From sequence record MZ475891.1: a stretch of DNA of 64,000 bases; one strand, 5' to 3'. The notes beneath the pieces are model-generated. The model saw only the letters and a program-made list of their open reading frames with translations. It ran no database searches and was not told the DNA's origin. Positions 11,107 through 15,709 of the stretch are shown here, piece after piece (the first letter of the stretch is position 1; each line of letters begins with the position of its first letter). The position numbers were made by a program, and so were the translations under genes.

Positions 11107-13128
11107 TTAGCCAAATACAATCTCAGTGATTGCAAGATACGTCACATCGTTTGAGTCGCCACGGTCACCAGAACCGTAGGCCATCAACCAAATCTCTTCA
11201 CCTGCAGGGATGTTAGTGTCGAATGTGATACGTTGCAGAACGTTAGCGCTTGAGTAGACACGTTGCGCTGCACCAGCACCTGCATAACGTTCGTAGATGG
11301 ACATGTCGTGCCAGCTACCGTTATTACCATCAAACACCCAATCAAATGTGATTCGCTTGATAGGTCGAGTGAAGAAGTTATTCCACTTGAACCAACCATT
11401 CGAGCCACCCCAGAAGTTCATATAGCTGCCGTCCCAAACTTTCAGGTTCTCAATGCCACCGCTGACTGTACGACCGCCAGTCTGTGTGAATGCATAGCAG
11501 TACCATGGGAATGGATCTGAATCAGGCGGCTGTGAGTTGCCACCAGCAACTGTGATGCAGCGATACGGAACTGTGAAGTCTCTGACGTTAATGTGCGGAG
11601 GCTGAATCGGACAGTACACATAGTAAGACCAGTCACACCCGATAGGGCCTGTAACGCGCACTGTGATCTCAGAACGCAGAACATGCTCAGGGTATTTCCA
11701 GAACTCAAGTGTACCAACAGCGCCTGCTACGACAATCGACGTATCAAGCAGATTCATATCACGGTCAAACACCTCGAACTTGGTGTCGAATGAGTTAGCA
11801 ACGCATACGACCAGCTCTGCTCGGATATCTGTCTGTGTGCCTAACGCAAAATTATCTTCTGTGGTTGGATGACCGGCAGAGTAAACGCTGTAGCTTTGGC
11901 ACGGATGCATGAACTCACGCGCACCACGCTCCGAAGGACAATAAAGGCTGTAGAAGAAGCTGTCGAGTGATTCAGCGTTTCCAAAGTCTTTAGATACCAC
12001 GCGCACCATAATGTCACACGCGATGTTCTTAGGGTCAAAGTAGAAATACAGATAACCCTCAAGTGTCTTCGCATCAAGCGTTGTTGCAATACGTCTACCG
12101 TTTTGATACACCTCAATGAAGTCGAGCGTTTCCCACGAGGTATAATCAAGGTACATCCAGCCTGCTGTCCAGCCCACAAAGTGATAATACTCGAACGCGT
12201 TAGCATTCTGAATACGCTCTGCAATAGGCCACACTGAGGCATGACACGGAGCTGGGAAGACTGGCGTGCCGATATAGTCAGGGTTGATAACGTCAGGGTA
12301 ATTGATAACGTCATACGCGGCTTGACTGTCGAGCGCTAACCCACCACGGTCAGAAGGTGCAGAAAGCAGAGGAGGATAAACCATCATGCTCCAGCCGTAA
12401 CCTTGAGTTGTGCGCACACGTATCATGATACGCATATCGGCAGCGTCAGGGTCAAACTGGAACTTGATGCGAGAACGTCCTGTTACTTTACCGCAAGATG
12501 AAGCTACGCGCACGCCCATGTGATAGACGTCAATGCTTGCACCAGCAGGAGCATACGAAGCAAAGTTAACCTCGACATAACCTTCAGTTGCAGGCAGAGC
12601 GTAGATCGTTTCAGTGATAACAGCACCACGACCGTGAGTAGATGCATAAGGCACGTTGGGGTTAGCATACGTGCCCAGACCTGCTCTCGATGCTACGCCT
12701 ACAGGGTCATAAGACTCAAGCGTCTTGATGCCTGGGCGATTGATACTGCGACCAGTTGGCGGTGCTGACGAGTTGACTACACCGAAGCCTGTACGACCCG
12801 CATCAGGCAAGTCGAAGCCTATTGGATAGCCTCCAAGAATCGTATAGCTCTCACGACCACCACTGCCTATACCGTTACCGGAGCCTTTGGTTGTTGACGT
12901 AGGGCCACCGCCACATGCACCTGTTTCGAGATTTGAACAGGGATCATCATACGTAGGGTCAAACGTGTCATCGATTAAATGCCAGCGCTTGCCCCACTGA
13001 TTACGCACGCTGAACTTCTCAGGTGTTAGAGGAGTCCAGTCACCTTCCTTGGTGCGAACGTACATGGGCGTATCGACACAATCAAGCCAACCGTTATTCG
13101 CAGCATTACGAACGCGAAAACGTGACAT
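11107..13128 (-). CDS. Virion protein with three tandem beta-sandwich repeats
   Basis: Three ~85-aa units with I.V.V/IRV and ending WSMMVYPP, FFYSLYCP, WSYYVYCP. Confidence 0.65.
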   Translation of the reverse strand: MSRFRVRNAANNGWLDCVDTPMYVRTKEGDWTPLTPEKFSVRNQWGKRWHLIDDTFDPTYDDPCSNLETGACGGGPTSTTKGSGNGIGSGGRESYTILGGYPIGFDLPDAGRTGFGVVNSSAPPTGRSINRPGIKTLESYDPVGVASRAGLGTYANPNVPYASTHGRGAVITETIYALPATEGYVEVNFASYAPAGASIDVYHMGVRVASSCGKVTGRSRIKFQFDPDAADMRIMIRVRTTQGYGWSMMVYPPLLSAPSDRGGLALDSQAAYDVINYPDVINPDYIGTPVFPAPCHASVWPIAERIQNANAFEYYHFVGWTAGWMYLDYTSWETLDFIEVYQNGRRIATTLDAKTLEGYLYFYFDPKNIACDIMVRVVSKDFGNAESLDSFFYSLYCPSERGAREFMHPCQSYSVYSAGHPTTEDNFALGTQTDIRAELVVCVANSFDTKFEVFDRDMNLLDTSIVVAGAVGTLEFWKYPEHVLRSEITVRVTGPIGCDWSYYVYCPIQPPHINVRDFTVPYRCITVAGGNSQPPDSDPFPWYCYAFTQTGGRTVSGGIENLKVWDGSYMNFWGGSNGWFKWNNFFTRPIKRITFDWVFDGNNGSWHDMSIYERYAGAGAAQRVYSSANVLQRITFDTNIPAGEEIWLMAYGSGDRGDSNDVTYLAITEIVFG

Positions 13129-13139
13129 GTACTATCTCC

Positions 13140-13631
13140 TTACGGGCGAATCCACAGTGCACCTGCTGAAATCTCTTGGTCGAGTGCAGGGTCAGTGTCT
13201 TGAATGAATATCTCCAAGACACCTGGGTTTCCAGGAGCACCAGTCGGTCCTGTAGCACCGGTAGGACCTGCTGGACCACGAATACCCACATAGCCTTGCT
13301 TGCCTGGCAGACCATCGATACCACGAGGACCAACACATCCGTCAGTACCACGCTTACCGTCAGAACCCATCAGGCCGTCGATACCATCACGACCAGAAGC
13401 ACCAACGCCACCTTCAGGGCCGTAGCCGATGCTGTAGATAGTAGGCAGGCCAGAGATAGCGAGCTTTCCGATACTCGGAATATTGATAGACAGCACACCT
13501 GTCAGTTGATCGAAGGCGCCTTGTAGCGTTGTTTCGTCTTCGGCCACATCAACAGACACACCGCCTTGAGTTGCTACTACCTTACCAGACGCATTCGTCT
13601 TGAGTAGCGATATATCAACCTTTTCTACCAC
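13140..13631 (-). CDS. Short collagen-like fibre protein (23 triplets)
   Basis: GPEGGV...GNPGVL; cap motif GLPT; C-terminal AGALWIRP. Confidence 0.85.
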   Translation of the reverse strand: MVEKVDISLLKTNASGKVVATQGGVSVDVAEDETTLQGAFDQLTGVLSINIPSIGKLAISGLPTIYSIGYGPEGGVGASGRDGIDGLMGSDGKRGTDGCVGPRGIDGLPGKQGYVGIRGPAGPTGATGPTGAPGNPGVLEIFIQDTDPALDQEISAGALWIRP

Positions 13632-13640
13632 GAGAACTCC

Positions 13641-14273
13641 TTATGGCCATGTGGTGCCTTGATCTTTAGTAGGGTCGACCCAGAGCGTGCCGGCAGCTAC
13701 AGCTCCTGGCTGGGTAGCGCTAACGATAATTGCAAGACGACCGGAAGGACCTGCAGGACCAGTTGGGCCAGTAGGACCAGTACCACCAGTAGAGCCAGTA
13801 GGACCAGTACCACCGCGAGGACCAGTAGGTCCAGTCGGCCCCATAGGTCCTTCACGACCTTCTCTGCCCGTAGGCCCAACATTACCGTCACGGCCATCAC
13901 GACCATCCGGGCCTGGTATGCCTTGCTCGCCATCTGGACCAACAGGGCCTGTACAGCCTGGACCGCCCGTTGCACCATCACGACCATCACGACCGTCTTT
14001 TCCGTCTGCACCTGTTTCACCTTTCTGACCTGTACGACCTGCTGGAATATCAGACGCAGTTGGGAAACCTGAGACTTTGAGACTACTGCCGTTAGCAAAG
14101 CGCAGAGTTAACACGCCCGCAGTAGCGTCATACGAGGAATCTGACGTGACTTCTGATGGAGCTTCGGACTCCGCGCTGTTGACAACAAGTGTACCGCCAG
14201 ATGCTCGGACAGGTGTCGCAACAGAGCTTACGCCCGCAGCGATTAAACTTGTTTTTACCTTTATCAAACTCAT
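13641..14273 (-). CDS. Collagen-like fibre protein (34 triplets)
   Basis: GRTGQK...GPSGRL; cap motif GFPT; C-terminal AGTLWVDP. Confidence 0.85.
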
Positions 14274-15709
14274 TACGTCTTCTCCGCCTGAGCAGTCATA
14301 TCCGTGTTATGAGCCAGAACATCACCAACGAAATAGCAGTCGAAAGGTTCAACGTCTATGTCTACGGTATTAACGAGTTGGTCTATACGACGACATTCGT
14401 ATACAGACACAGGACCTTTACGTCCTCTGACTTGCATTCCTTGCTTAACTTCACGAGCAGGAACATAGCGCCATTGCTTATCATCGTAGATCAGCACAGG
14501 ATGTTCGTGCGTAAACTTCTGTCCGTTAATGACGAAGTAGTGATCTTCCTGACCGTATTTGAGTGCTCGAACAGCAGCATAGACATTCTTACCTTTCAGA
14601 CTTGGTGAGGACCATTTACGGAACTCTTTAGGCTGATTGGAGAACGATGCAAGCATATCACCTACAGACAAACGCTCAACAGGCACAGAGCCTGCGATTG
14701 TATGCACAGTAGAGCCGAACACGATACAGCCAGATGTTTTACTCACAGGGTTACGTGCAACTACGGTCAGAGCAGACTTCACTGTGACTGTAGGTCGAGA
14801 GGGTTGCCCCATGTCTGTTACTAAACAACTGATGGTGCCTTTGATTGTACGATCAGCACCGAGACCAAGACGCAGATAGAAGTTAACTATACAGGTGTTA
14901 GTCTCTATGGCGTCAAGATTAACGCCCTCAGTTGTTGTGATTGTCCACTTGTACTTGTATGGACCCACACCGCCACGCGCATTGACAGGCAGATAAGCAA
15001 GCGAGGTGAATACGTCAGACCCTTGTACTGTGCGCGTGCCTACCATGTACAGACTAGACACAGAAGCAACAAGTGGGCTGATAGTAGGAAGAGGAGGTGC
15101 TGGCGATACGTTAGCAGTCGGGTACAGCCACACGAACACGTTAGATGCAGTGGGCTGCACATTAGACAGCACAGCAGTTTCGATAGGCGCAGGACCAGTA
15201 GGACCCGTTGCGCCCGCGATACAGCTTGGACCGTCATTGCCTCGTGGACCGAGTATGCCAGTAGGACCCGTTGGACCGATTGGCCCTGTAGGCCCGTCTT
15301 TACCGTCAGGACCCGTGTCACCGTCAGGACCAGTAGCGCCGTCACGACCAGGTTCACCCGCAGTGCCGTTAAGACCTCTAGCACCAGGGAGACCACCACA
15401 GCCGTCAGCACCAGTAGAGCCATCACGTCCATCACGACCGTCACGACCAGCAGCGCCTGGCGCACCTCTCTTACCTTGCTTACCTGAACCAAACATTGCA
15501 CTCGTAGGCAGGCCGGGGATATTAACTAAATCCCCATTCTGTTTGATGAGTACGAGCACGCCGTTCTTACTGTCAAACTTTACGCTTGCGATCTGTGTCG
15601 TTGTCAACACATCGGAGGATTCGAATTGAATACCACCAGCAACAGCAACAACGGATTTACCTTCATCGTTGCCTGTTGTCTCGATTTGCGAAAGTTTTAA
15701 GTCTGTCAT
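14273..15709 (-). CDS. Collagen-like fibre protein with Ig-like segment and C-terminal Hint domain
   Basis: 29 triplets + CIA break + 3 triplets; [10 protein letters not shown] Ig-like motif; Hint domain at the C-terminus. Confidence 0.85.
14306..14728 (-). other. Hint (Hedgehog/intein) autoprocessing domain, endonuclease-free, 141 aa
   Basis: G|CIVFGSTV (C1), [14 protein letters not shown] (block B TxxH), VDIDV...[10 protein letters not shown]|T (blocks F/G, +1 Thr). Confidence 0.85.

What the first reader, a model, noticed from the sequence alone, without database searches (positions are those of the whole stretch)
14306..14728. Collagen fibre terminates in an intact intein-like Hint domain with a 10-residue C-extein
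Seen: G|C at 14728, block B TxxH (FTHEH), block F Asp (VDIDV), terminal HN followed by Thr and only [10 protein letters not shown]. Established: these residues drive the N-S acyl shift, Asn cyclisation and splicing in inteins and cleavage in bacterial intein-like domains; selfish inteins normally sit in conserved enzyme cores, often with a homing endonuclease, which is absent here. Inference: a domesticated autoprocessing module that releases itself after folding (analogous to S74 intramolecular chaperones), splices on a short tail, or uses the thioester to ligate the fibre to another molecule.
Basis: partly seen in the sequence, partly recalled or inferred. Interest (0 to 1): 0.75.

Follow-up and report, generated by a model that had tools for sequence, protein, structure and literature searches.

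The report
Self-cleaving intein-like cap on phage fibre
A collagen-like tail-fibre protein of an Erwinia jumbo phage ends in an intact intein-type self-processing domain plus a 10-residue tail. The same terminal module recurs on many unrelated phage fibres, so it looks like a reusable self-removing cap rather than a selfish intein.

Summary
ORF 14273..15709(-), 478 aa, in Erwinia phage pEa_SNUABM_13 ends in a 141-residue Hint domain, from Cys328 (14728-14726) to Asn468 (14308-14306), followed by a 10-residue tail.

The fold is Hint. A profile of six phage copies gives E=7e-10 against the solved Clostridium thermocellum bacterial intein-like (BIL) domain. The AlphaFold model scores pLDDT 84-94 over the domain, and Foldseek ranks BIL domains first and mini-inteins after them.

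G327, C328, T400, H403, D450, H467 and N468 are invariant in 22 orthologues. dN/dS is about 0.13-0.21. There is no endonuclease.

The Hint-less orthologue in Dickeya phage JA11 stops exactly at the linker before G|C, in the same gene order. The mature fibre therefore probably ends there.

The same terminal Hint occurs on non-orthologous phage fibre proteins: 99 of 138 relatives carry tails of 25 residues or fewer. The +1 nucleophile is not conserved, but a Lys near the C-terminus is (96/99).

Best reading: a type-A-BIL-like autoprocessing cap that excises itself by a Cys328 thioester and Asn468 cyclisation. Whether it cleaves, splices on the tail or forms a Lys isopeptide is not decided.

GenBank notes already say 'contains intein domain' for orthologues. 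No held paper describes the architecture. I rate it a new variant of a known kind.

The parts
14273..15709 (-). Whole gene: 478-aa collagen-like tail-fibre ('virion structural') protein with a C-terminal Hint domain; the stop TAA (14275-14273) overlaps the ATG of the next gene.
   Evidence: Full-length match to phrog_38766. 100% identical to Erwinia phage pEa_SNUABM_13, MZ475891.1.
15485..15709 (-). N-terminal domain (residues 1-75), shared with the two downstream collagen-like paralogues; probable virion-attachment end.
   Evidence: PHROG alignments of the three paralogues to the same profile regions. The AF2 model shows short beta strands at low confidence. The attachment role is an inference.
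15224..15484 (-). Collagen-like Gly-X-Y region (residues 76-162, 29 triplets).
   Evidence: Pfam Collagen E=1e-13, above the cutoff. The Gly-X-Y run was located. Every Gly is invariant in 22 orthologues.
14744..15223 (-). Neck plus all-beta (Ig-like sandwich) tip domain (residues 163-322).
   Evidence: AF2 pLDDT is about 87-92 for residues 210-322. Weak Foldseek matches to Ig/pilin-type folds. Conserved in 60 phage records, including the Hint-less Dickeya JA phages.
14729..14743 (-). Disordered linker VSKTS-G (residues 323-327) ending in invariant Gly327, the -1 residue of the scissile bond.
   Evidence: pLDDT below 50. G327 is present in 22/22. The JA11 orthologue stops just before this linker.
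14306..14728 (-). Hint domain, 141 residues, Cys328 to Asn468: a mini-intein-sized, type-A-BIL-like autoprocessing domain.
   Evidence: The relatives hit Pfam PT-HINT, Intein_splicing and Hint. dN/dS is 0.13-0.21.
14726..14728 (-). Cys328: block A nucleophile (position 1 of the Hint domain).
   Evidence: 22/22 in the family; at least 90% of 68 distant relatives.
14501..14512 (-). Block B T-x-x-H (Thr400 to His403).
   Evidence: T400 and H403 are 22/22 and nearly invariant in 68 distant relatives.
14351..14365 (-). Block F (VDIDV, with Asp450 and Asp452).
   Evidence: D450 and D452 are 22/22. They align to block F of the BIL domain 2lwy.
14306..14311 (-). Block G His467-Asn468 (the terminal Asn that cyclises in inteins and type-A BILs).
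   Evidence: 22/22. H and N are at least 90% conserved in 68 distant relatives.
14276..14305 (-). 10-residue C-terminal tail (Thr469 to Thr478), with invariant Asp470, Glu476 and Lys477.
   Evidence: Disordered in the model. A Lys-containing short tail is found in 96 of 99 terminal-Hint relatives.
14282..14285 (-). GGAG Shine-Dalgarno-like motif for the downstream gene, lying inside the Ala475/Glu476 codons of the tail.
   Evidence: Read directly from the sequence. This explains part of the conservation of the tail, but not the Lys in relatives whose SD lies beyond the stop codon (L005, L009).
13641..14273 (-). Downstream paralogue 1: 210-aa collagen-like tail-fibre protein without a Hint domain.
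   Evidence: The gene order is conserved in L001, L002, L004, L005, L008 and L009.
13140..13631 (-). Downstream paralogue 2: 163-aa collagen-like tail-fibre protein without a Hint domain.
   Evidence: same conserved gene order.

Best explanation
The last 151 codons of the fibre gene encode a catalytically complete, endonuclease-free Hint domain of the bacterial-intein-like (type A BIL) kind, plus a 10-residue tail. It serves as a single-use self-processing cap on the distal end of a collagen-like tail fibre, a candidate 'hair' of this hairy jumbo myovirus. The proposed course is as follows. After translation and folding, Cys328 attacks the Gly327 carbonyl (N-S acyl shift, helped by Thr400/His403 and Asp450) to give a thioester. 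Asn468, helped by His467, cyclises and cuts the bond to the tail. The thioester is then resolved by Thr469 or the freed amine of the tail (giving a spliced fibre of about 33.9 kDa) or by water (giving a fibre of about 32.9 kDa ending at Gly327). Either way the 16-kDa Hint domain leaves, and the mature fibre ends at or just after Gly327, where the Hint-less orthologue of Dickeya phage JA11 naturally ends. What is shown: the fold, the residues, their conservation, purifying selection, the modular distribution and the truncated natural orthologue. What is inferred: that the chemistry takes place, in which order, and which product dominates.
For: Fold. The profile-to-PDB search ranks BIL domain 2lwy first at E=7.3e-10 over its full length, then PT-HINT/BUBL BIL2 and mini-inteins. 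The AF2 model has Hint pLDDT 84-94. Foldseek gives 2lwy E=7.7e-8 TM 0.81, then BIL2 (6y75/6tmm) about 1e-6 TM 0.75, then gp41-1 and other mini-inteins.

Catalytic set. G327, C328, T400, H403, D450, D452, H467 and N468 are 22/22 in orthologues that are only about 67% identical across the domain. C, T, H, H and N are at least 90% conserved in 68 distant relatives. dN/dS is 0.13-0.21.

Removability. JA11 gp096 (324 aa) has the same neighbours and ends at ...ARNPK, right before the linker, with only 10 nt to the next gene. The JA13 protein is also 324 aa.

Modularity. 263 representative proteins match at E<=1e-3. Of 138 with an identifiable HN, 99 have 25 or fewer residues after it. Their N-terminal parts include collagen (17/68), Ig, fn3, Calx-beta, BACON and tail-collar domains, and tail-fibre PHROGs unrelated to this one. 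In phage NCTB a homologue of the neighbouring 673-aa window protein also ends in a terminal Hint, while the window copy has none.

Conserved HN together with a conserved tail argues that Asn cyclisation is used, not only N-terminal cleavage. Type-A BILs are known to form the thioester, cyclise Asn, and give mostly cleavage products plus some splicing (PMC4031507).
Against: There is no direct evidence of processing. No virion proteomics or gel data for this protein were found in the held literature, and the Y3 paper is not held. The protein's own Pfam score is below threshold. The AF2 model rests on only 22 fairly close sequences. Thr+1 makes this copy formally intein-like rather than BIL-like. 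The Hint-less JA11 orthologue also shows the fibre can work without the module, so its benefit is unclear. RefSeq calls the full-length product a 'virion structural protein', but the basis for that name is not stated.
Confidence: 0.62

Rival explanations
1. BUBL-like conjugation. The Cys328 thioester is resolved by the epsilon-amine of a lysine, not by water or the tail's alpha-amine or Thr. The lysine could be the invariant Lys477 of the tail (giving a branched C-terminus once Asn468 cyclises) or a lysine on a neighbouring virion protein (giving an ATP-independent covalent anchor or cross-link of the fibre).
For: The second-closest solved relative by both sequence profile (E about 2e-4) and structure (E about 1e-6, TM 0.75) is BIL2 of the Tetrahymena BUBL1 locus. 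That domain forms a Lys(epsilon-NH2)-to-C-terminus isopeptide and transfers its N-extein to various substrates (PMC8616854, section 2.4). 96 of 99 short tails contain Lys, with the last Lys at position -1 or -2 in 55 of them. Lys occurs in the last 4 residues in 70/99, against 12/50 and 10/57 in controls. The Lys persists where the downstream SD lies outside the tail. A Gly or poly-Gly run precedes Cys1 (G327 in 22/22; poly-Gly in 26/99).
Against: The Lys enrichment is a correlation among homologous, not independent, sequences. Within-tail shuffling gives only z about 2.2. Part of the tail conservation in this clade is explained by the embedded SD. The tail is disordered in the model, so proximity cannot be judged. 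No acceptor protein is known.
Confidence: 0.15
2. S74-style intramolecular chaperone. The main job of the Hint cap is to nucleate or register trimerisation and folding of the distal fibre and collagen helix, and it cuts itself off only once assembly is complete.
For: The cap has the same position and logic as Peptidase_S74 caps on unrelated fibres and spikes: a C-terminal, self-cleaving, portable module. The fibre is expected to be trimeric because of its collagen region.
Against: Hint domains are monomeric single-turnover enzymes in all solved relatives returned. The trimer prediction of residues 186-478 gave no answer. The JA phages make the orthologous fibre without any such cap. The two downstream collagen paralogues also lack it.
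Confidence: 0.12
3. Selfish passenger. The domain is an endonuclease-less mini-intein that entered near the 3' end of the gene, splices cleanly (Thr+1) and persists only because precise deletion is rare. It confers no benefit on the phage.
For: In this clade all class-1 intein residues, including a +1 Thr, are present. Intein-sized Hint domains are common in phage genes (one search lists helicase inteins). The module is dispensable in the JA phages.
Against: Orthologues outside the clade have A, V, M or S at +1, and only 12 of 99 terminal relatives have Ser or Thr, so clean class-1 splicing is not the conserved activity. The same terminal architecture recurs on many non-homologous fibre proteins always at the extreme C-terminus, which is not a homing-site pattern. 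The Hint-less allele carries no counterpart of the C-extein. The nearest relatives are BILs, not inteins.
Confidence: 0.08
4. Retained, non-processing domain. The Hint fold stays on the mature fibre as a structural or binding tip domain and the catalytic residues are not used.
For: RefSeq and PHROG label the full-length product a virion structural protein. No processing data exist.
Against: Complete invariance of the nucleophile, TxxH, block F Asp and terminal HN across divergent sequences is what is expected for chemistry, not binding. The tip beta-sandwich upstream is the more usual binding module, and it is the only one kept in the JA phages.
Confidence: 0.06

Closest known systems
Type-A bacterial intein-like (BIL) domains (Amitai et al. 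2003; Dassa et al. 2004; solved example Clostridium thermocellum BIL, PDB 2lwy)
   Same: Best sequence and structure match. About 140 residues, with no endonuclease. It has Cys1, TxxH, block F and a C-terminal His-Asn. It sits in a variable surface or secreted protein rather than an enzyme core. In the wider clade +1 is usually not a nucleophile. The known chemistry is a thioester plus Asn cyclisation, with cleavage products dominant and some splicing (PMC4031507).
   Different: It sits at the very end of the protein, with only about 4-10 residues after HN instead of a downstream domain. The host protein is a phage tail fibre. This copy has Thr at +1. The tail carries a conserved C-terminal Lys.
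BIL2 of the Tetrahymena thermophila BUBL1 polyubiquitin-like locus (PDB 6y75, 6tmm)
   Same: Second-best structural and profile match. A Gly precedes Cys1. It is documented to resolve the thioester onto a Lys epsilon-amine (PMC8616854), and Lys is the conserved feature of the tails here.
   Different: It is eukaryotic and is flanked by ubiquitin-like domains. No ubiquitin-like fold is seen here, since the N-extein ends in a beta-sandwich plus linker. Lys ligation here is only a hypothesis.
Class 1 mini-inteins (for example gp41-1, NrdJ-1, DnaB and RecA mini-inteins)
   Same: Same fold and the same A, B, F and G block residues. In this clade a +1 Thr is present.
   Different: It is not inserted in a conserved motif of an essential enzyme. 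The Hint-less allele shows no contiguous extein, and the C-extein is only 10 residues. The +1 nucleophile is not conserved among orthologues. Sequence similarity is weaker than to BILs.
Hedgehog (Hog) C-terminal autoprocessing domains
   Same: The topology is the same: cargo, then a Gly|Cys junction, then Hint at the C-terminal end, with release of the N-terminal cargo through a thioester.
   Different: Hedgehog domains lack the terminal His-Asn and carry a sterol-recognition region. Here HN is invariant and only a 10-residue tail follows. No Hedgehog structure ranks among the top matches.
Pretoxin HINT (PT-HINT, PF07591) of polymorphic toxins
   Same: Half of the distant relatives (34/68) match this Pfam family, with a best E of 1e-39. 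Some orthologues carry a precomputed PF07591 hit.
   Different: PT-HINT precedes a C-terminal toxin domain that it releases. Here nothing but a short tail follows. The window protein itself does not reach any Pfam Hint threshold.
Peptidase S74 intramolecular chaperone domains of phage tail spikes and fibres
   Same: It works in a similar way: a portable C-terminal self-cleaving cap found on many unrelated fibre proteins.
   Different: The fold and chemistry are unrelated. No S74 hit was found in Pfam, and the fold is Hint. A chaperone role has not been shown here (one search gave no answer).

Membership tests
Hint superfamily (fold level) | Hint beta-fold recognisable by structure and profile comparison | tested here: met
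   AF2 pLDDT is 84-94 for residues 328-470. Foldseek top 25 PDB matches are all BIL or intein Hint domains, the best being 2lwy at E=7.7e-8, TM 0.81. The profile against PDB gives E=7.3e-10.
Hint superfamily (fold level) | Conserved blocks A (Cys/Ser1) and B (TxxH) | tested here: met
   C328, T400 and H403 are 22/22 and at least 90% conserved in 68 distant relatives.
Type-A BIL domain | C-terminal His-Asn like inteins (block G) | tested here: met
   H467-N468 is 22/22. The definition is taken from PMC4031507.
Type-A BIL domain | No nucleophilic residue (Cys/Ser/Thr) at the C'-flanking +1 position | tested here: not met
   The window protein has Thr469, and Thr is present in 21/22 of the close family. 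More distant orthologues have A, V, M or S. Among 99 terminal relatives only 12 have Ser or Thr and none has Cys. The clade as a whole fits the feature, but this copy does not. I therefore file it as BIL-like, not as a strict member.
Type-A BIL domain | Closer in sequence to BILs than to inteins | tested here: met
   2lwy scores E=7.3e-10, against a best intein match of 1.6e-4.
Type-A BIL domain | Resides in variable, non-enzymatic (surface or secreted) proteins rather than in conserved sites of essential enzymes | tested here: met
   The host is a collagen-like tail-fibre protein. Relatives sit on Ig, fn3, Calx-beta, BACON and tail-fibre proteins.
Type-A BIL domain | Autocatalytic cleavage or splicing activity | not testable with these tools
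   No proteomic or biochemical data were found.
Canonical class 1 intein | Cys/Ser1, TxxH, block F Asp, terminal His-Asn and a +1 Cys/Ser/Thr | tested here: met
   All are present in the window protein.
Canonical class 1 intein | In-frame insertion in a host protein whose intein-less alleles have contiguous N- and C-extein sequence | tested here: not met
   The Hint-less orthologue JA11 gp096 ends at the junction and has no counterpart of the 10-residue C-extein. The Hint is terminal, not internal.
Canonical class 1 intein | Homing endonuclease domain or its remnant (typical, not obligatory) | tested here: not met
   The domain is 141 contiguous residues with no insert, and no endonuclease family appears in Pfam.
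Hedgehog-type (Hog) autoprocessing domain | C-terminal Hint after a Gly|Cys junction, lacking terminal His-Asn and followed by a sterol-recognition region | tested here: not met
   The junction and terminal position fit. However HN is invariant and only 10 residues follow.
Pfam PT-HINT (PF07591) | Score above the gathering threshold, with a toxin domain downstream | tested here: not met
   The window protein gives no PF07591 hit and only Hint_2 at 18.1 bits against a 28.4 cutoff. Nothing but a short tail lies downstream. Relatives do match PF07591.
Peptidase S74 intramolecular chaperone | S74 sequence and fold with a Ser-Lys dyad | tested here: not met
   There is no Pfam S74 hit, and the fold is Hint. 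Only the position and the presumed logic are alike.
Collagen-like phage tail fibre | Gly-X-Y triple-helix repeats above the Pfam threshold, in a tail-fibre gene module | tested here: met
   PF01391 scores 51.3 bits against a 27.2 cutoff. Tail-fibre PHROGs match. The gene neighbours tail-fibre, tail-protein and PAAR genes in L001.

The most novel reading that the evidence does not exclude
Terminal BIL-type Hint domains with a C-terminal Lys tail form a distinct, widespread class of phage fibre maturation modules that carry out ATP-independent isopeptide chemistry, as the Tetrahymena BUBL BIL2 domain does. In this reading the Gly327 thioester is passed to a lysine epsilon-amine. The lysine would be either the tail's own invariant Lys477, leaving a branched C-terminus after Asn cyclisation, or a lysine on a neighbouring virion protein, covalently fixing or cross-linking the 'hairs' of hairy jumbo phages.
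Probability: 0.15. Interest if true: 0.85.

Novelty: new variant of a known kind. Interest (0 to 1): 0.55.

Why it matters
The biological purpose of bacterial intein-like domains has stayed unclear since they were described in 2003. Here the domain sits on an abundant, easily purified structural protein of cultivable phages. A natural Hint-less orthologue is available for comparison, so simple virion proteomics could show what the chemistry produces.

It would also add a second, unrelated kind of self-removing C-terminal cap on phage fibres beside the S74 chaperones. That matters for annotating fibre genes: the mature receptor-binding end is not the encoded end. It also bears on identifying the still unknown 'hair' proteins of hairy jumbo phages (PMC6143709).

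The Lys-tail pattern, if real, points to a ligation chemistry of general interest for protein science.

Tried and rejected
- **Direct Pfam and NCBIfam scans of the protein.** Only a sub-threshold Hint_2 hit and collagen families came back. I relied on profile and fold searches instead.
- **Trimer prediction of residues 186-478 (three copies).** It gave 'no answer', so it counts neither for nor against an S74-like trimerising role.
- **Search for further Hint domains in all six frames of the window.** None was found.
- **Shine-Dalgarno explanation for the tail's Glu/Lys conservation.** GGAG does lie in the Ala475/Glu476 codons here. In relatives L005 and L009, however, the SD lies beyond the stop codon and the Lys is still present. 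The SD is therefore a partial explanation only.
- **Within-tail shuffling test of Lys position.** It is only weakly significant (42 observed against 33.6 +/- 3.9), so I treat the C-terminal anchoring of the Lys as suggestive.
- **Literature.** The Y3 paper is not held. The PaBG and jumbo-phage review papers mention only terminase or RNR inteins.
- **Sequencing-run search.** It found soil metagenome DNA runs holding about 0.58 of the words and no RNA evidence.
- **Overlapping plus-strand ORFs (14077..14373 and 14189..14608).** They have no homology support and are treated as chance ORFs.
Full report
**Where we are.** The window is 100% identical to Erwinia phage pEa_SNUABM_13 (MZ475891.1, 264.7 kb). 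This is a jumbo myovirus of the Y3/Alexandra/AD1 group, whose members are described as 'hairy Myoviridae' with still unidentified hair proteins (PMC6143709). The finding lies in ORF 14273..15709 on the minus strand (478 aa). This is the first of three consecutive collagen-like genes in a tail module. Upstream are a 779-aa protein with a weak tail-collar N-terminus, a large tail protein and a PAAR gene. Downstream are collagen-like proteins of 210 and 163 aa and a 673-aa protein.

**Observation.**
- Gly327|Cys328, with the Cys codon at 14728-14726.
- Block B: Thr400 to His403.
- Block F: Asp450 within VDIDV.
- His467-Asn468, with Asn at 14308-14306.
- Thr469, then a tail of 10 residues before the stop. 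The stop overlaps the next gene's ATG.

One anatomical correction is needed. The order of parts is:
- N-terminal domain (1-75)
- collagen (76-162, 29 triplets)
- neck and an all-beta sandwich (163-322)
- a 5-residue disordered linker
- Hint (328-468)
- tail (469-478)

So the collagen does not itself run into the Hint domain.

**Is it a Hint domain?** Yes.
- On its own the sequence scores only weakly: Pfam Hint_2 at 18.1 bits, below the cutoff, and PDB 2lwy at E=0.014.
- A profile of six phage copies hits the solved Clostridium thermocellum bacterial intein-like (BIL) domain over its full length at E=7.3e-10. Next come the BIL2 domain of the Tetrahymena BUBL1 locus and several mini-inteins.
- An AlphaFold2 model built on 22 orthologues gives pLDDT 84-94 across residues 328-470. 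The linker and tail are disordered.
- Foldseek against the PDB ranks 2lwy first (E=7.7e-8, TM 0.81), BIL2 second (about 1e-6, TM 0.75), and then only inteins.
- Of 68 more distant relatives, 34 match Pfam PT-HINT (best E 1e-39), 25 match Intein_splicing and 12 match Hint.
- There is no endonuclease insert, and no second Hint domain exists anywhere in the window.

**Is it kept functional?** Among 22 orthologues that are on average 67% identical over the domain, G327, C328, T400, H403, D450, D452, H467 and N468 are present in 22/22. Thr469 is present in 21/22, and Asp470, Glu476 and Lys477 in 22/22. Pairwise dN/dS of the domain is 0.13-0.21, with dS near saturation. Across 68 distant relatives the nucleophile Cys, the T and H of block B and the terminal HN are each at least 90% conserved. 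This pattern fits retained chemistry, not a decaying or merely structural domain.

**Natural presence and absence.**
- tblastn finds the Hint domain in 55 phage records: 48 Erwinia, AD1, a Yersinia phage, an Alcaligenes phage, a Salmonella phage, phage NCTB and an uncultured phage.
- The upstream beta-sandwich is found in 60 records. The difference is the Dickeya JA phages (Salmondvirus).
- In JA11 the orthologue is 324 aa. It has the same upstream and downstream neighbours and ends at ...ARNPK, immediately before the position of the window's linker and G|C. Only 10 nt separate it from the next gene. BFVD lists the JA13 protein at the same 324 aa.
- So a working phage of this lineage makes the fibre with the protein ending where the Hint domain would cut. 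This is the strongest comparative argument that the mature fibre ends at or near Gly327.
- Deeper relatives with the same three-gene order keep the terminal Hint: NCTB, Afa-NA1 and metagenomic contigs L009 and L010. Presence therefore looks ancestral and the JA state looks like a loss.

**A portable terminal module.**
- An exhaustive HMMER search with the domain found 263 representative proteins at E<=1e-3.
- Of 138 with an identifiable terminal HN, 99 have at most 25 residues after it, and 77 have at most 10.
- Their N-terminal parts are heterogeneous. They include collagen (17/68), Ig, fn3, Calx-beta, BACON, PASTA and tail-collar domains.
- Several belong to tail-fibre PHROGs unrelated to this protein (P0075, P0076, P0133). 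One sits next to an NlpC/P60 gene in a tail-like module.
- In phage NCTB, a 1304-aa protein whose first 460 residues are 36% identical to the window's 673-aa ORF (11107..13128) also ends in a terminal Hint. The window copy has none.
- A poly-Gly run precedes Cys1 in 26 of the 99.
- This distribution resembles that of a reusable C-terminal cap, comparable in logic to Peptidase S74 caps. It does not look like a site-specific homing intein.

**Which chemistry?**
- The +1 residue is Thr only in the Erwinia/Dickeya clade. Orthologues further out have A, V, M or S. Among the 99 terminal relatives +1 is mostly A, K, V, L or N, with Ser 9, Thr 3 and Cys 0. Class-1 transesterification therefore cannot be the conserved mechanism.
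- This matches type-A BIL domains. They keep His-Asn, lack a +1 nucleophile, form the N-terminal thioester, cyclise Asn and yield mainly cleavage products. Some ligation occurs through the freed amine (PMC4031507).
- The terminal HN is conserved even though only a few residues follow. Asn cyclisation is therefore evidently under selection, which argues that the tail is not irrelevant.
- 96 of the 99 tails contain a Lys. The last Lys is at position -1 or -2 in 55 of them. Lys lies in the last four residues in 70/99, against 12/50 for relatives with non-terminal Hints and 10/57 for window ORFs.
- In this clade part of the tail's conservation is explained by a GGAG ribosome-binding motif for the next gene, which lies in the Ala475/Glu476 codons. 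In L005 and L009 the SD lies past the stop codon and the Lys remains.
- BIL2, the second-closest solved relative, is documented to resolve its thioester onto a lysine epsilon-amine (PMC8616854). A Lys-directed ligation is therefore a live possibility, but it is unproven.

**Verdict on mechanism.**
- Most likely (0.62): the domain is a single-use autoprocessing cap that excises itself. Cys328 forms the thioester and Asn468 cyclises. The result is a fibre of about 33 kDa ending at Gly327, or at Gly327 plus the 10-residue tail, together with a free 16-kDa Hint domain (masses).
- Less likely rivals: the thioester is passed to a lysine as in BUBL; the cap's main purpose is S74-like assembly help (the trimer prediction gave no answer); it is a benefit-free mini-intein passenger; or it is retained uncleaved.
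- None of these can be separated without proteomic or structural data.

**Comparison with the known, and novelty.**
- At fold level this is a Hint domain. By sequence and structure it is nearest to type-A BIL domains.
- It fails one strict BIL criterion, because it has Thr at +1.
- It fails the intein criterion of being an internal insertion with contiguous exteins in Hint-less alleles.
- It fails the Hedgehog criteria, because HN is present and there is no sterol-recognition region.
- It has no downstream toxin as PT-HINT domains do.
- I therefore describe it as a BIL-like terminal Hint cap, not as a member of any one of these families.
- Its mere presence is not new.
- Three things appear undescribed in the held literature (ten searches): the recurrent extreme-C-terminal architecture on phage fibres, the precise Hint-less orthologue, and the Lys-tail pattern.
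- I rate it a new variant of a known kind, of moderate interest.

**Limits.**
- No experimental evidence of processing was available.
- The structure model rests on a shallow alignment.
- The representative proteins are homologous, so counts over them are not independent events.
- Metagenomic gene calls may misplace some protein ends.

Noticed in passing
Proteins P0021-P0171; window tail 14276-14305: Short tails after terminal Hint domains follow the pattern HN-x(0-12)-K-x(0-3)-end. 96 of 99 contain Lys. The last Lys is the final or penultimate residue in 55. Lys makes up 13.6% of tail residues.
   Followed up: partly
Metagenomic proteins P0026, P0033, P0059, P0111, P0113, P0125: These proteins are built of two to four tandem Hint domains joined by very short HN-K-GGGG-C linkers. 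If every junction is processed, the linkers would be released as tiny Lys-Gly peptides. Their purpose is unknown.
   Followed up: no
window 11107..13128 (-); L002:8308-12222; L005:6111-7337: The 673-aa ORF downstream of the collagen genes is 36% identical over 475 residues to the N-terminal part of a 1304-aa NCTB protein. That NCTB protein carries Calx-beta and ends in its own terminal Hint. The ORF is also 56% identical to a 408-aa Afa-NA1 protein labelled 'large intein domain protein'. The window copy has no Hint.
   Followed up: partly
L002:6483-6944 (phage NCTB BN7874_135): A free-standing 153-aa ORF directly after the Hint-bearing fibre gene is a degenerate Hint. It ends in VHN-KVD, has no block B TxxH and hits no Pfam family. 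It may be a decayed duplicate. BFVD model A0A1C3NFC5 superposes on the window Hint at TM 0.84.
   Followed up: partly
window 15709-14273, 14273-13641, 13631-13140 (all minus strand): Three tandem collagen-like paralogues share an N-terminal domain of about 75 residues. Their collagen lengths differ (about 29, 33 and 22 triplets). Each has a Cys inside the Gly-X-Y region, and Cys104 and Cys163 of the first are invariant. They are candidates for the unidentified 'hairs' of hairy jumbo phages.
   Followed up: no
window 14273-14287: The stop of the Hint gene overlaps the start of the next gene (TAATG), and that gene's GGAG ribosome-binding motif lies inside the tail codons. The 10-residue tail is therefore under dual coding and translation-initiation constraint.
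   Followed up: yes
phrog_38766; RefSeq orthologues: The PHROG category 'head and packaging' and the product name 'virion structural protein' for this family are uninformative. Domain content and gene neighbourhood indicate a tail-fibre protein.
   Followed up: partly
L003 (Ruminococcus phage NatCom_28775, two places): A weak Hint match (E=0.01) begins at the very start of an annotated 261-aa CDS in a gut Heliusvirales phage, with a second place in the same genome. The architecture differs from the terminal cap. I did not examine it.
   Followed up: no
window 14276-15709: Two soil-metagenome DNA runs and one other run hold about 0.55-0.58 of the sampled words of this gene, so close relatives occur in soil. 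No RNA run was shown to hold it.
   Followed up: no
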